From contig NC_043010.1 of NCBI RefSeq assembly GCF_006345805.1, forward strand, positions 67,828,001 to 67,892,000: a DNA stretch of 64,000 bases, read 5' to 3'. The notes beneath the pieces were generated by a model. It saw only the letters and a program-made list of their open reading frames with translations, made no database searches and was not told where the DNA came from. Origin of the DNA: Octopus sinensis (taxonomy: Eukaryota). Shown here piece by piece: positions 3,469-14,209 of this stretch (position 1 is the stretch's first letter; each line of letters starts with the position of its first letter). A program made the translations under genes and the position numbers.

Positions 3469-6400
3469 TTAGAAACGAGGCCATCTTTGATGGCATTTAA
3501 TGTGATTGGTGAAGTCATCTACTGTCTGAAATGTAAGGCCACAGCATTCAAACGTGAACTTGGTGTTGGAGCCATCATCTGTCTCTGAAGAATTGTCCTC
3601 GGCTCCAGACAGCTGGTCTTGGGTCTCCGAGACCATATCCACTTTGCTATTACTACTACTGCTACTACTACTCGGTCGAACAGCCGAGTGCTGTTCCGCG
3701 TACTTTTTCAAATGGTTGTGTTTCGCTGGTGATTTCTTCTTGGAATGTTTGTTGTTGTTGTTGGTGTCTCTGTTTCGGTAAGTCCGTGAAGAATTGCATA
3801 CAAGCAGGTGTTCGGACATTGGGCATTCGAGTTTTTCTCTGCAGTTGTAACATTTGTGGATGTCAATTTCTTTCGCATGGCTTTGGCGGTGCTCCAACAA
3901 CAAAGGTACACCAAGAAATGGCTTGCCACAAATGTCACAGGCAAACACGGCACAACGTTTGCTGACAGGATCTCCAACCCTCTGTTGTTGCCTCTGCAAG
4001 ACATTCGGTATTTTTAACTTTGGGGTTTTGTTAGCAGGAAGGGACTCGTGGAGGAGCATGTTCGGTTTATCTTTACGTAGAGAACAGTGAGTTAAATGGA
4101 TTCCTAAGTCATTCAGAGATTCGCAGACTTTTCTACAACATCTGCAGTGTAAGGTTGCCGTAAAAGACTCATTGTGGCACTGACGGTGTAGCAGCCCTTC
4201 CTTGATAGAAGGGAATTTCCTGCCACAAAAATCACATCTGAATAAACCCTTTGTTTGGTTCTGGTTTGGAGGAACAAATTTTGGACTAGAATCACTTAAA
4301 CTCTTTCCACTGGTGTAGTTTTCTCCACTACTCAGTCCAGACACTGAGGCACTACCACTTGCGACACATGTGAGCAAGTGTTCGGCCATACAACCTGGTT
4401 GGATGAAAACAGCTGAACACAAGCGGCATTTATAGGGCATCTCATTAGTATGGCCTCTTCGGTGACGCATAATCCAATTGCTACCTGCAAATGTCTTTCG
4501 GCAGAAATCACAGTGAAAAAGCCTTTGAAGTTTCTGTCGGTCTGCAAAGACAAACCGACGCCAGGAATGTGCTGTGCCGTTTCTGATTATCATCGGAGGT
4601 GATGTCACTGTTTTACCATTGGCTCTTGGAGAATCATAACCCGTACGCCGACTCAGGCAACAAGAAGCCAAATGATCAGCAAACACACCAGACCGGTAAA
4701 AAACTGTATCGCATCGGCGGCACCTAAATATTCCTTCCTCTTGTACGTGATCTTTGCGATGTTTCATGACTCGTAAGCTATGGCCGAACCTTTGGCTGCA
4801 GAAGTCACATTTATACATCTTATCGGAATTATGCTGTCTCAGAGATCCGTCAGAACTGCTGTCTTTTGATTGCAAACGGCACCAGCTGAGATGTTGGGCT
4901 AGATCCTGTGAGGTTGGCAAAATTCGCCTGCAGTTACGGCACCAAAGACTCGTGTCGCTGATGTGTTTTACTCGGTGTTTTATGAGATTAGCTGCAACGG
5001 CAAATGCTTCTTCGCAAAAGTCACACCGGAATTTCGACTTCTTGCAGATCAAATTGAGGCTTTCTGCAAACTTCTCCAGTGAACTACCATATTCACTGTC
5101 ATCAGAGCTGTGAGCATCGGTGCCTTTCTCATCACTTTTTAAAGCATTTTCTACACTTTGAGAAGGGCCTAAATTACAAAACGTAATTTCTTCTTTAAAA
5201 GGTAACACATTTTCTCTCCCACGATTTTCTTCCCGTTCTGAATGTCCAAAGTTTGTTTGGAGAGGTGAGTCGTTCTGACATTTTTCAAGATAATCTGTAT
5301 TATTCTTTATTGAGGGACAATCAGAGAGAGAAGTTTCTGCCTGAAGAGGAGTCTTTGGTAATAATGGTGCATTATATTCTTCAGTAGATGACAAATTGGC
5401 TTTTAATTGATGCTTATTTTCATTGTAGATATTCTGTTGATTTCCAGAATCTGAGGAAGCCAATAAATTTCCGGAACTTTCCCCTACCATCAACTTACAT
5501 TTTTTGTTAGGCTGTGTAAGCAACACCTCTTCATTTGATTGGTTAAAATAACTTTGATAGTCCAATGAACTCTTCCGCTTTTCGTTGGCTAGTTGCATTG
5601 ACGAGACAGTGGAGGAGAAGGAACTGAAATCAGATGGCTTGCCACTGCTGCTTGGCACTCTACTGGACGGAAGACTGGTACTTTCAGTCTCTGATGTGTT
5701 ATTTAGTTGATTTAAAGAAGGCAAAAGGTGAAGTTGGCTTTTAGCAGCCACATTATCATACGTATGTAATTTTAAATGTTGTTTTGATTCTTCACTCTGA
5801 GAGTGTCCAGTGTCTTTATTACAGCTGTTAGGAATGCTGTCTTTCCGTTGGTTTATCTTCCAAGGACGATGTATTTGTTGAATGCATAACCGACACTTTT
5901 TCTTCCCCTCCTCCACAACAGTCAGTTGCCTGCTGGGAAAATGTAAACCACAAAAATCACAAAGTGGAAATGTATTTAGAAAACGCTTACAATCGGCCGA
6001 CCGTCCAGCGGAACGCAGCTTAGAAGAGGCCAAAGCTTCAGAATTCATCAGCGCCCTCTTCGCTAATTTGTAATCTTTCTTTGTTGGGCGTCTGCAACTT
6101 GTTAAGTGTGATGCAATTTGGTGAGAGTGCACGAAGCCCTCCCCACAGACACGGCATTCAAATATCGTCTCTTGTGTGTGCAGCTTTCTGTGACGTATGA
6201 TCCAGTTATTGCTGCCGAAGTCTTTGCCGCAGAAATCACAAGTGTAAATAATTTTATTCTCCTGGTGGTTTTCTATTGTTGATGAGTCTGTCATTTTGTT
6301 ATTCATAAGAAATCCAATTTCTTTGCTCTGGTGTTGTTGATTGGGGCTTTGATTGGAATTTTCCTGGTTCGAATTAGAACGGTTTGGCAACTCTGAGTTT

Positions 6401-13783: not shown

Positions 13784-14209
13784 CTTAGTTACATCAACAT
13801 GTCTGTTGTTGCTGCTTTGTACACTATTGTCGTCCTCTTCCTCGTCTTCCTCTTCCTCATCCTCTTGGGAAGATGTCGCATTATTACTGCACAAATGGTG
13901 ATTCAGCCGAGTGGTTTCGCTGAAGGTCTGCAGACAGACCTGGCACTGGATCAAAACCTGCAGGCTGTGGCAGTGCCGCATGTGTATCCTGAACTTGCTC
14001 ATGGCTGTCGATGGGAATGTCTGGTGGCACAGAACGCAGCAAATGTCAGACTTCTCACAAGACACTGAAGAAGAGGATTTCGCCGGCTGTTCTTTGACTG
14101 TGGCATCATCAGCTTCCTGCTCTCCTAGCTTTGGGGTGTGGGTTCGCTTTTGCTGCCATTTTGAGGATGGTTCCTCTGACATGCCGTCTTCTGAAGAACA
14201 ATCTGCCAT
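13784..14209 (-). CDS. First coding exon (142 aa) of the same zinc-finger gene
   Basis: ATG at 14209 in gcaATGG context, with an in-frame upstream TGA at 14227-14225. Encodes a C2H2 (CVLC..HMRHCH) + C2HC (CQVC..HHLC) doublet and an acidic tract. Ends AAG|GTATGA, phase 0, matching the acceptor at 11592. Spliced product 2849 aa. Confidence 0.85.

What the first reader, a model, noticed from the sequence alone, without database searches (positions are those of the whole stretch)
3469..14209. Giant zinc-finger protein built from ~17 isolated C2H2+C2HC doublets
The protein repeats one two-finger cassette: CD[FY]C-x3-F-x8-HR-x2-H, a mostly 7-aa linker (TSEKKY, TNEMPY, TKESRY), then C-x2-C-x12-HL-x2/3-C. 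Cassettes are separated by long low-complexity spacers (mostly tens to a few hundred aa). This differs from the TGEKP-linked tandem arrays typical of the cephalopod C2H2 expansion. C2HC fingers are protein-binding modules in FOG/U-shaped, so a multivalent scaffold is plausible (inference). I do not recognise an orthologue.
Basis: partly seen in the sequence, partly recalled or inferred. Interest (0 to 1): 0.75.

Follow-up and report, generated by a model that had tools for sequence, protein, structure and literature searches.

The report
Giant cephalopod paired zinc-finger protein
A real, expressed octopus gene encodes a 2,849-residue protein made of 16 separate two-finger zinc-finger modules on floppy spacers; it is an uncharacterised variant of ordinary zinc-finger proteins, found so far only in octopuses, argonauts and cuttlefish, and it most likely binds chromatin at many points at once.

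Summary
On the minus strand, two coding exons (14209-13784 and 11592-3469) splice in phase 0 to a 2,849-aa product. This product is identical to RefSeq XP_036365080.1, an uncharacterised protein of Octopus sinensis. It contains 16 canonical C2H2+C2HC doublets separated by 16-354 aa, and no cluster has more than two fingers.

Orthologues with the same doublets in the same order exist in O. bimaculoides, O. vulgaris, Argonauta hians, Sepia esculenta (a spliced, polyadenylated mRNA) and an unnamed relative of Sepia. Doublets are conserved (80% identity to Argonauta) while spacers drift (45%).

A doublet HMM run against 1.84 billion proteins finds no other family member. Fish ZNF1035 shares only the generic cassette.

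Nine first fingers carry the same helix, with Trp at +3 and Arg at +6, a combination absent from 5,892 comparator fingers.

My best reading is inferred, not shown: a nuclear, multivalent DNA or chromatin binder that works like ZNF512B or Spalt. It is a new variant of a known kind and of moderate interest.

The parts
13784..14209 (-). Coding exon 1 (aa 1-142). ATG at 14209. Holds a degenerate finger pair (aa 57-107, window 13889-14041) and an acidic run.
   Evidence: The spliced product equals XP_036365080.1. The equivalent N-terminal part is joined in frame in the Sepia esculenta mRNA.
11593..13783 (-). Phase-0 intron of 2,191 nt (GT..AG), filled with SINE-like repeats.
   Evidence: The intron position is conserved: an acceptor TTTCAG|GTG lies at the same codon in the genomic contig L001, and the cuttlefish mRNA reads straight across it.
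3469..11592 (-). Coding exon 2 (aa 143-2849 plus the stop codon). One 8.1-kb exon holding all 16 canonical doublets.
   Evidence: It is also a single ORF in the decapodiform-like genomic contig L001.
11434..11589 (-). N-terminal atypical finger pair (aa 144-195): CHLC..HRW, then CLTC..H-x3-H.
   Evidence: It is among the best-conserved blocks from octopus to the cuttlefish relative.
11368..11430 (-). Basic stretch RRRSLRHKRQPKTEKKRKTKK (aa 197-217), which looks like a nuclear localisation signal.
   Evidence: the only window of 8 residues with at least 6 K/R. Basic in all orthologues. Its function is inferred.
11200..11364 (-). Doublet 1 (aa 219-273), non-Trp type, with H-x4-H and H-x5-C.
10879..10971 (-). 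CxxC-x19-CxxC motif (aa 350-380), a possible zinc ribbon.
   Evidence: Weak Zn_ribbon_8 match, E 0.009, below the Pfam cut-off.
10339..10701 (-). Acidic spacer (aa 440-560) with three motifs that resemble SUMO-interaction motifs.
   Evidence: Conserved in Argonauta. Function not tested.
10009..10158 (-). Doublet 2 (aa 621-670), Trp type A.
9760..9915 (-). Doublet 3 (aa 702-753), Trp type A.
9439..9588 (-). Doublet 4 (aa 811-860), Trp type A.
8803..8955 (-). Doublet 5 (aa 1022-1072), Trp type A.
8530..8682 (-). Doublet 6 (aa 1113-1163), Trp type A.
7645..7800 (-). Doublet 7 (aa 1407-1458), non-Trp, net charge -5. Absent from the cuttlefish-type orthologues.
7252..7401 (-). Doublet 8 (aa 1540-1589), non-Trp.
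7051..7203 (-). Doublet 9 (aa 1606-1656), Trp type B (GGSNWIMRHRR, linker TSEKKY). This is the doublet that was modelled.
   Evidence: AlphaFold2 pLDDT 91.5, two beta-beta-alpha fingers.
6853..6921 (-). Lone C2H2 finger (aa 1700-1722). It is a full C2H2+C2HC doublet in the cuttlefish-type orthologues, so here it is a decayed doublet.
6421..6573 (-). Doublet 10 (aa 1816-1866), Trp type B.
6094..6246 (-). Doublet 11 (aa 1925-1975), Trp type B.
5875..5967 (-). Second CxxC-x19-CxxC motif (aa 2018-2048).
   Evidence: conserved from octopus to cuttlefish. No Pfam match.
4879..5031 (-). Doublet 12 (aa 2330-2380), preceded by the conserved segment SLEKFAESLNLICKK, which is predicted to be helical.
   Evidence: The helix comes from a low-confidence model.
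4657..4815 (-). Doublet 13 (aa 2402-2454), the best conserved (96% identity to Argonauta).
4366..4518 (-). Doublet 14 (aa 2501-2551), Trp type B (linker TNEMPY).
4084..4242 (-). Doublet 15 (aa 2593-2645), non-Trp.
3796..3945 (-). Doublet 16 (aa 2692-2741). The second finger is shortened (C-x2-C-x9-H-x3-C).
3490..3555 (-). Degenerate C-terminal finger FECCGLTFQ..HIKCH (aa 2822-2843), conserved in all orthologues.

Best explanation
What is shown. This is a real, transcribed gene with two coding exons (RefSeq LOC118766041 of Octopus sinensis). Its 2,849-aa protein is a string of 16 autonomous two-finger modules joined by disordered, fast-evolving spacers. Each module is a classical beta-beta-alpha C2H2 finger, a short linker of canonical length, and a second classical finger whose fourth zinc ligand is Cys. 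The modules arose by internal duplication before octopods and cuttlefish separated. They have been kept, one by one and in order, under purifying selection.

What is inferred. The protein is nuclear and binds nucleic acid, most likely DNA in chromatin, at many points at once. Each doublet alone would hold only a short site weakly. Nine doublets carry the same residues on the first finger's recognition helix (Ser/Gly/Asn at -1, Asn/Arg/Ser/Thr at +2, Trp at +3, Arg at +6, then H-R-R/K-x-H). They should therefore all prefer the same short target. Avidity from many weak, like-minded modules would direct the protein to clustered or repeated copies of that target, or let it bridge distant sites. 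In this it would work like the paired-finger chromatin aggregator ZNF512B or the AT-rich-DNA-binding doublets of Spalt proteins.
For: Gene and product:
- The splice sites and 2,849-aa product are identical to XP_036365080.1.

Expression:
- The Sepia esculenta orthologue is a 7,034-nt RNA-seq contig with exon 1 and exon 2 joined, an AATAAA signal and a poly(A) end.
- Run SRR19578101 is from a Sepia esculenta (golden cuttlefish) transcriptome study of juveniles/larvae.
- The intron position is conserved in a genomic contig.

Classical fingers:
- Pfam zf-C2H2 scores 74.9 bits (cut-off 25.2) and zf-H2C2_2 scores 67.9 bits (cut-off 40).
- AlphaFold2 models the doublet as two beta-beta-alpha units with pLDDT 91.5.
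- The doublet profile and the C2HC-finger profile both hit DNA-bound arrays best: ZNF568, Aart, CTCF, PRDM9, Gfi-1.
- The Foldseek list is made almost entirely of DNA-bound BCL11A, SALL3/4, CTCF, ZBTB7A and Kaiso fingers.

Selection:
- Identity to Argonauta is 80% in doublets against 45% in spacers.
- 12 of 16 doublets find their positional counterpart in cuttlefish, in collinear order.

Features consistent with DNA binding:
- The linker has the canonical 7 aa in 7 doublets, with TGEKP-like T-x-E-K (TSEKKY, TKESRY, TNEMPY). The motif T-x-E-K-x-Y is kept from octopus to cuttlefish in doublet 9.
- Finger 1 has R/K at the usual phosphate-contact position (H-R-R/K-x-H).
- 12 of 16 doublets are net positive, summing to +32.
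- There is one NLS-like basic stretch.

Shared specificity:
- Trp at +3 with Arg at +6 occurs in 9 of 16 first fingers here and in 0 of 5,892 comparator fingers. Trp at +3 alone occurs in 0.14% of those.

Functional precedent:
- In ZNF512B, pairs of C2HC and C2H2 fingers bind DNA, and chromatin aggregation scales with the number of pairs (PMC11602157).
Against: - No binding experiment or localisation data exist for this protein or any orthologue.
- Trp at helix +3 is almost never used in known base-contacting fingers (0.14% in the comparator set).
- Most second fingers carry Glu or Asp at +3. Neither residue is typical of a strong DNA reader.
- A conserved, identical helix face would suit a repeated protein or RNA ligand just as well.
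- The free AlphaFold2 model superposes poorly on DNA-bound pairs (RMSD 9-11 Å, TM about 0.4, no Foldseek E-value below 0.001).
- Three doublets are net negative.
- The three-doublet model has low confidence (pLDDT 49), so 'independent beads on a string' is only weakly shown.
Confidence: 0.5

Rival explanations
1. The protein is a multivalent protein-protein scaffold. The doublets would be protein-binding modules, as in the C2HC fingers of FOG/U-shaped or the two-finger dimerisation domain of Ikaros and Hunchback. The protein would gather many copies of one partner, or self-associate. The acidic spacers with SUMO-interaction-like motifs would add further protein contacts.
For: - The identical, conserved helix face (Trp +3, Arg +6) in 9 doublets is untypical of base-reading fingers.
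- The second finger has an acidic residue at +3.
- Five SIM-like motifs lie in acidic spacers and are conserved in Argonauta.
- AlphaFold2 gives the free doublet a defined inter-finger arrangement (pTM 0.72). Its best superposition by RMSD is Snail1 fingers bound to importin (RMSD 3.8 Å).
- From own knowledge: FOG C2HC fingers bind GATA fingers, and Ikaros C-terminal finger pairs dimerise.
Against: - No similarity to FOG beyond the generic finger. The C2HC profile retrieves fingers of classical, mostly DNA-binding, zinc-finger proteins, and no FOG chain is among the 60 listed matches.
- There is no PxDLS or RRKQxxP motif.
- C2HC is a common terminal-finger variant in ordinary zinc-finger proteins (17.6% of terminal against 2.0% of internal fingers).
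- The doublets are mostly basic, with a canonical-length, TGEKP-like linker.
- No partner is known.
Confidence: 0.25
2. The protein binds RNA. Widely spaced fingers on flexible spacers would bind structured or repeated RNA, as in TFIIIA fingers 4-6, WT1 or the dsRNA-binding JAZ/ZNF346 type. Trp would stack on bases.
For: - An aromatic residue on the helix face could stack on unpaired bases (inference).
- WT1 fingers bound to RNA appear in the Foldseek list (6wlh).
- Long spacers between finger units are typical of RNA-binding zinc-finger proteins (own knowledge).
Against: - Pfam assigns classical zf-C2H2, zf-H2C2_2 and zf-C2H2_4. There is only a sub-threshold zf-met match (10.7 bits, cut-off 21.2) and no jaz-type match.
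- Within each doublet the linker is short and DNA-type.
- There is no RNA-related domain or motif elsewhere in the protein.
Confidence: 0.12
3. The gene is an ordinary member of the lineage-specific cephalopod C2H2 expansion: a fast-evolving transcription factor or transposon repressor whose odd look is just degenerate tandem fingers.
For: - It is a C2H2 protein in an octopus genome known for C2H2 expansions (PMC12513265).
- O. vulgaris annotators called it 'finger 182-like'.
Against: - No cluster has more than two fingers.
- Only one representative per species was found, and no paralogue carrying the signature appears among 1.84 billion proteins.
- The doublets are orthologous by position between octopus and cuttlefish, so the array is old and stable rather than rapidly turning over.
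- Family doublets score 50-79 bits against the profile, while the best outsider scores less than 50.
Confidence: 0.05
4. The gene model is an annotation artefact or a pseudogene: a long ORF without function.
For: None beyond the low-complexity spacers and the lack of any named domain other than zinc fingers.
Against: - The 8.1-kb ORF is open in five species.
- The doublets are under purifying selection.
- A spliced, polyadenylated mRNA exists in cuttlefish.
Confidence: 0.01

Closest known systems
ZNF512B / ZNF512 (vertebrate paired C2HC + C2H2 finger proteins)
   Same: The fingers come in pairs that mix one C2HC and one C2H2 finger. A long intrinsically disordered region carrying an NLS separates the first pair from the second. 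In ZNF512B the pairs bind DNA, and chromatin aggregation scales with the number of pairs (PMC11602157). This is the best model for how the octopus protein might work.
   Different: ZNF512B has four pairs, and in each the atypical C2HC finger comes first. Here there are 16 pairs with a canonical C2H2 finger first and a C2HC finger of classical spacing second. No NuRD-interaction motif of the RRKQxxP type was found.
Spalt / SALL family (isolated C2H2 doublets)
   Same: These are large proteins with two-finger clusters separated by long spacers. SALL3 and SALL4 doublets bound to AT-rich DNA are among the top structural matches of the modelled doublet (7y3l, 7y3m, 7y3i, 8a4i).
   Different: The Foldseek E-values are not significant (0.016 or higher). 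SALL doublets are C2H2+C2H2 with a family-specific motif, and SALL proteins have far fewer clusters. No collinear similarity was seen in any search.
[quoted passage not shown]
   Same: The paired arrangement of fingers with long gaps is a recognised bilaterian architecture (PMC2889900).
   Different: That family has only 2-3 pairs (4 to 6 fingers). It did not appear in any sequence search here. Direct comparison was not run.
Fish 'zinc finger protein 1035' (uncharacterised giant zinc-finger protein)
   Same: It was the only non-cephalopod hit of the first search (Perca, E 2.8e-34). It is 2,100-3,000 aa long and has a central run of 5-8 C2H2+C2HC doublets.
   Different: Its doublets are embedded among 35-40 fingers that include 4-6-finger tandem arrays. 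The HSPs against the octopus protein are many, off-diagonal and only 20-24% identical. None of its doublets is among the best-scoring outsider domains, which are generic TGEKP pairs of at most 50 bits. It has no Trp-type helix. The two are therefore not orthologous.
FOG / U-shaped (C2HC fingers that bind GATA factors)
   Same: Both use classical-fold fingers with Cys as the fourth zinc ligand, and both are multi-finger proteins with spaced fingers.
   Different: From own knowledge, the protein-binding C2HC fingers of FOG are single fingers. Here each C2HC finger is the second half of a canonical pair. No FOG chain is among the 60 listed matches, and there is no CtBP or NuRD motif.
Tandem-array C2H2 proteins (KRAB-ZNF-like; cephalopod C2H2 expansions)
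   Same: Same finger fold and same intra-pair linker length. Each doublet scores 30-39 bits against ZNF568 pairs.
   Different: Arrays of three or more fingers are absent, the gene is single-copy per species, and the doublets are positionally conserved over the octopod-decapod split.

Membership tests
Classical C2H2 (Krüppel-type) zinc-finger superfamily | Spacing C-x2-4-C-x12-H-x3-5-H, with the conserved aromatic and aliphatic core positions | tested here: met
   All 16 first fingers fit the spacing. Pfam zf-C2H2 scores 74.9 bits against a cut-off of 25.2, zf-C2H2_4 scores 62.8 against 27, and zf-H2C2_2 scores 67.9 against 40.
Classical C2H2 (Krüppel-type) zinc-finger superfamily | Beta-beta-alpha fold for each finger | tested here: met
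   The AlphaFold2 model of doublet 9 has pLDDT 91.5 and an EE-EE-H pattern twice. This is a prediction, not an experiment.
Classical C2H2 (Krüppel-type) zinc-finger superfamily | Zinc binding by the four ligands, including the terminal Cys of finger 2 | not testable with these tools
   The four ligand columns are invariant in 16 paralogues and across orthologues. Metal binding needs experiment.
FOG / U-shaped | Sequence similarity of the C2HC fingers to FOG-type fingers | tested here: not met
   A profile of 28 second fingers run against all PDB sequences lists fingers of classical, mostly DNA-binding, zinc-finger proteins. No FOG or U-shaped chain is among the 60 shown out of 104 matches at E up to 1.
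FOG / U-shaped | CtBP-binding PxDLS motif and N-terminal NuRD-binding RRKQxxP motif | tested here: not met
   A regular-expression search found neither motif. The definitions of the motifs come from own knowledge.
FOG / U-shaped | Binding to GATA N-fingers | not testable with these tools
   This needs a binding assay.
Fish ZNF1035 | Collinear, full-length similarity (orthology) | tested here: not met
   BLASTP gives 30 or more overlapping off-diagonal HSPs of 18-25% identity. Per-doublet HMM scores are no higher than for generic pairs.
ZNF512 / ZNF512B | Pairs made of an atypical C2HC finger followed by a typical C2H2 finger | tested here: not met
   Here the order is C2H2 then C2HC in all 16 pairs. 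The ZNF512B order is as described in PMC11602157.
ZNF512 / ZNF512B | Sequence homology to ZNF512B | not tested
   No ZNF512B sequence was fetched. It did not surface.
Spalt / SALL | Family-specific doublet motif and collinear cluster arrangement | tested here: inconclusive
   There is only fold-level resemblance, at non-significant Foldseek E-values. No SALL protein appears among the sequence hits.
Disco / basonuclin | Two to three split pairs with family-specific fingers | not tested
   The architecture is known only from the literature (PMC2889900). No sequence comparison was run.
Cephalopod lineage-specific C2H2 expansion | Tandem finger arrays and many recent paralogues | tested here: not met
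   The largest finger cluster has 2 fingers. Only one cluster per species carries the signature among the best 150 of 1.84 billion proteins.
The new coleoid family itself (octopus, argonaut, cuttlefish orthologues) | Collinear C2H2+C2HC doublets, the W-[VI]-x-R-H-R helix, the shared N-terminal pair and C-terminal FECC finger, and a phase-0 intron before the big exon | tested here: met

The most novel reading that the evidence does not exclude
A coleoid-specific genome-architecture protein. Its nine identical-specificity Trp/Arg doublets would read one short motif that is repeated in cephalopod-specific repetitive DNA (SINE-like elements or satellites, which fill this very window). The protein would thereby cluster, compact or silence those repeats. 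That would make it a lineage-restricted, multivalent chromatin organiser that uses a recognition mode (Trp at helix +3) not described for zinc fingers.
Probability: 0.15. Interest if true: 0.65.

Novelty: new variant of a known kind. Interest (0 to 1): 0.35.

Why it matters
Almost all that is known about C2H2 proteins comes from tandem arrays that read long DNA words. A protein built almost only of isolated two-finger units, kept one by one since before octopuses and cuttlefish separated, is a natural test case. It asks how multivalency, rather than array length, gives targeting.

The conserved Trp(+3)/Arg(+6) helix is a recognition surface with no counterpart in the 5,892 comparator fingers examined here. 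Its ligand, whether DNA, RNA or protein, is a clear and cheap experimental question.

The protein also adds a single-copy, ancient, coleoid-restricted zinc-finger gene to a picture of cephalopod zinc-finger evolution that has been dominated by recent expansions.

If it turns out to be one more chromatin-bound zinc-finger protein, the gain is modest.

Tried and rejected
1. Orthology to fish ZNF1035, the only outside hit, was rejected. The HSPs are non-collinear, the per-doublet scores are no better than generic pairs, and there is no Trp helix.

2. FOG-type identity of the C2HC finger was rejected.

3. A search with a concatenated alignment of conserved blocks (A2) returned only generic zinc-finger proteins and did not even recover the family. 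The word-seeded search seems unsuited to such a pseudo-protein, so that call was wasted.

4. The first word-seeded search missed the decapodiform orthologues, probably because low-complexity words swamped the candidate list. They were found by the exhaustive HMM search and by using P0004 as the query.

5. AlphaFold2 of a 254-aa stretch with three doublets gave pLDDT 49. Only its secondary-structure pattern was used.

6. Foldseek E-values for a 57-aa model are not significant. The hit list was used only as a description of the fold.

7. No exon-1 homologue was found in the 2.4 kb upstream of the big exon in contig L001. The intron there is simply longer than the contig allows.

8. Rfam and tRNA scans of the window found nothing.

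9. Pfam scans of other ORF scraps in the window gave nothing above the cut-offs.

10. Literature searches for the gene identifiers found nothing.

11. RNA editing was not examined.

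
Full report
**1. The observation**

The window is octopus DNA. On the minus strand there is a 2,693-aa ORF (3469..11550) and a 143-aa ORF (13778..14209). Reading the sequence shows an ATG at 14209, a donor AAG|GTATGA after 13784, and a polypyrimidine tract with acceptor TTCACAG|TTA before 11592. Both junctions are in phase 0.

The product is identical, residue for residue, to RefSeq XP_036365080.1, 'uncharacterized protein LOC118766041 isoform X1' of Octopus sinensis. The locus is CM016872.1:67.83 Mb of assembly GCA_006345805.1.

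A pattern for C2H2, linker, C2HC finds 16 doublets. In 2,000 shuffles of the protein the mean count was 0.0005 and the maximum was 1. Aligned, the 16 copies share invariant C, D, C, H, R, H in finger 1 and C, C, H, C in finger 2.

Linkers are 5-9 aa; 7 is the commonest length, found in 7 of 16. Spacers are 16-354 aa and low in complexity.
- a pair in exon 1;
- a pair at aa 146-195;
- a lone finger at aa 1702;
- a C-terminal FECC finger.

No cluster has more than two fingers.

**2. What it is**

Pfam sees only classical fingers, well above its cut-offs (zf-C2H2 74.9 bits, zf-H2C2_2 67.9, zf-C2H2_4 62.8). A profile of the doublet matches ordinary TGEKP-linked finger pairs of solved DNA complexes at 30-39 bits per pair (ZNF568, Aart, CTCF, PRDM9). 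A profile of the C2HC finger alone again retrieves fingers of classical, mostly DNA-binding, zinc-finger proteins and no FOG chain among the 60 listed.

AlphaFold2 models doublet 9 as two beta-beta-alpha fingers with pLDDT 91.5. Foldseek lists DNA-bound BCL11A, SALL3/4, CTCF, ZBTB7A and Kaiso fingers, though none at a significant E-value for so small a model.

In 170 unrelated giant zinc-finger proteins, Cys as last ligand occurs in 17.6% of cluster-terminal fingers against 2.0% of internal ones. The cassette is thus a classical finger pair closed by the common 'terminal' C2HC variant.

**3. Relatives**

The same 90% cluster holds O. bimaculoides XP_014778481.1 (94% identical) and O. vulgaris CAI9733231.1 (99%). 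Argonauta hians has a 3,337-aa orthologue in which every doublet is present. Identity is 80% inside doublets and 45% outside, and spacers take large insertions.

The exhaustive doublet-HMM search of 1.84 billion representatives gave 133,281 hits at E up to 0.001. Only three proteins stand out: the octopus protein (1040 bits), Argonauta (893) and P0004 (801). After these come generic giant arrays. Only these three carry the W-[VI]-x-R-H-R helix.

P0004 lies on a 12.6-kb genomic contig as one uninterrupted ORF and is collinear with the octopus protein. Using it as a query found P0171, which is 73% identical to it. P0171 is encoded on a 7,034-nt contig of run SRR19578101. That run is from a Sepia esculenta (golden cuttlefish) transcriptome study of juveniles/larvae.

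The cuttlefish contig joins the exon-1 equivalent to the big exon and ends in AATAAA plus poly(A). In P0004's genomic contig, a polypyrimidine tract and TTTCAG acceptor sit at exactly the homologous codon. So the gene is transcribed and spliced as modelled, and the intron is old.

Twelve of 16 octopus doublets find their positional counterpart in cuttlefish, in collinear order. The array therefore predates the octopod-decapod split. Published molecular clocks put that split in the late Palaeozoic to early Mesozoic (own knowledge).

Family doublets not used to train the profile score 50-73 bits. The best outsider domain scores under 50 and is a generic TGEKP pair.

Fish ZNF1035, the only outside hit of the first search, has 5-8 such doublets among 35-40 fingers. 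It is neither collinear nor specially similar. I conclude that the family is, as far as these libraries show, restricted to coleoid cephalopods and single-copy. Whether the libraries include Nautilus is unknown.

**4. Anatomy that bears on function**

Nine first fingers share the helix [S/G/N]-x-[N/R/S/T]-W-[V/I]-[M/I]-R-H-R-[R/K]-x-H, and this is kept in all orthologues. Two subtypes appear:
- Doublets 2-6 pair this helix with a second finger carrying K/R at -1, E at +3 and K/R at +6.
- Doublets 9, 10, 11 and 14 have G-S-N-W and a different second finger.

Trp at +3 occurs in 0.14% of 5,892 comparator fingers, and Trp(+3) with Arg(+6) in none.

Seven doublets have the canonical 7-aa linker with TGEKP-like T-x-E-K. 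Twelve of 16 doublets are net positive (sum +32). There is one NLS-like basic stretch at aa 197-217. The N-terminal spacers are strongly acidic.

A three-doublet AlphaFold2 model is of low confidence (pLDDT 49). It shows three finger pairs, one helix in a conserved pre-finger segment, and disordered spacers.

**5. How it most likely works**

Shown: a conserved, expressed protein made of 16 classical two-finger modules on disordered spacers.

Inferred: it is nuclear and binds DNA in chromatin multivalently. Each pair is a weak reader of a short site, and nine pairs have the same specificity residues. Binding would therefore depend on avidity for clustered or repeated targets, or on bridging sites.

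The functional precedent is ZNF512B. Its C2HC/C2H2 pairs bind DNA, and stepwise deletion of pairs proportionally reduces chromatin aggregation (PMC11602157). Spalt doublets on AT-rich DNA are a second precedent. I put this reading at about 0.5.

Rivals:
- A protein-binding scaffold, about 0.25. The Trp face, the acidic +3 of finger 2 and the SIM-like motifs favour it.
- An RNA binder, about 0.12.
- An ordinary member of the recent C2H2 expansions, about 0.05.
- An artefact, about 0.01.

**6. Comparison and novelty**

The protein is a member of the classical C2H2 superfamily (features tested and met). It is not a member of FOG, ZNF1035 or ZNF512B, and it is not part of the tandem-array expansions (features tested and not met). 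Membership of Spalt and of Disco/basonuclin was not properly tested; no sequence search brought them up.

Three things are new:
- the architecture, built almost purely of isolated C2H2+C2HC pairs, 16 of them;
- the Trp/Arg helix signature;
- the restriction to coleoids.

The gene model itself is already in RefSeq, unnamed and unstudied. My verdict is a new variant of a known kind, of moderate interest.

Noticed in passing
window 5185-5223 (-), aa 2266-2278: RefSeq isoform X2 of O. sinensis and the O. bimaculoides model both lack the 13 residues NRGRENVLPFKEE. The 39 nt have no GT..AG ends and are flanked by GAAGAA on both sides. This looks like an indel or a model difference rather than a true alternative intron.
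   Followed up: partly
window 11593-13783 (intron): The intron is filled with repeats. There is an inverted pair of SINE-like elements (12211-12299 and 12625-12713, 91% complementary, 325 nt apart) that could fold into a long hairpin in the pre-mRNA. There is also a roughly 250-nt tandem duplication (13196-13638).
   Followed up: partly
window 10339-10701 and 9184-9393 (-), aa 440-560 and 876-945: The acidic spacers carry five short hydrophobic cores flanked by Asp/Glu/Ser (DVTVL, AVVEVTI, VTIVD, IAIV, DDVILC) that resemble SUMO-interaction motifs. Several are conserved in Argonauta. Their function is untested.
   Followed up: partly
window 10879-10971 and 5875-5967 (-), aa 350-380 and 2018-2048: There are two CxxC-x19-CxxC motifs outside the doublets. 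The second is conserved from octopus to cuttlefish. The first gives only a sub-threshold Zn_ribbon_8 match (E 0.009). They may be extra zinc knuckles of unknown role.
   Followed up: partly
P0002 (Argonauta hians), about aa 700-1085: A roughly 400-aa insertion of degenerate MKKVSKQQQQ repeats lies between doublets 2 and 3. This shows that spacers can expand freely while the doublets stay fixed.
   Followed up: no
window 6853-6921 (-), aa 1700-1722: The lone C2H2 finger in octopus and Argonauta is a complete C2H2+C2HC doublet in the cuttlefish-type orthologues. Conversely, doublet 7 (aa 1407-1458) is missing there. So there has been lineage-specific decay of single units.
   Followed up: partly
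170 unrelated giant zinc-finger proteins fetched: Cys as fourth ligand is about nine times more frequent in the last finger of a cluster (17.6%) than in internal fingers (2.0%). This is a general regularity that explains the C2HC half of the cassette. The sample is biased, because it was selected by the doublet profile.
   Followed up: partly
window 22802-23803, 26830-27486, 38411-38720, 46261-46585, 50976-51447, 55236-56287, 57694-58059: The rest of the window holds no evident gene but has large simple repeats: (AT)n of 1 kb, (ACAT)n, (ATAC)n, (GAT)n, a 151-nt GT-rich satellite, and a 184-nt tandem pair of SINE-like units. There are no Rfam families and no tRNA genes.
   Followed up: partly
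window 45199-45495 (+), 39796-40230 (-), 52606-52926 (+): These short ORF scraps look by eye like transposon remains (a mariner-type transposase tail and reverse-transcriptase fragments). Pfam gives only a sub-threshold RVT_1 match (E 0.067) for the second.
   Followed up: partly
window 3469-14209 within CM016872.1: The gene lies about 0.57 Mb from the end of a 68.4-Mb chromosome-scale scaffold (67,828,469-67,845,209).
   Followed up: no
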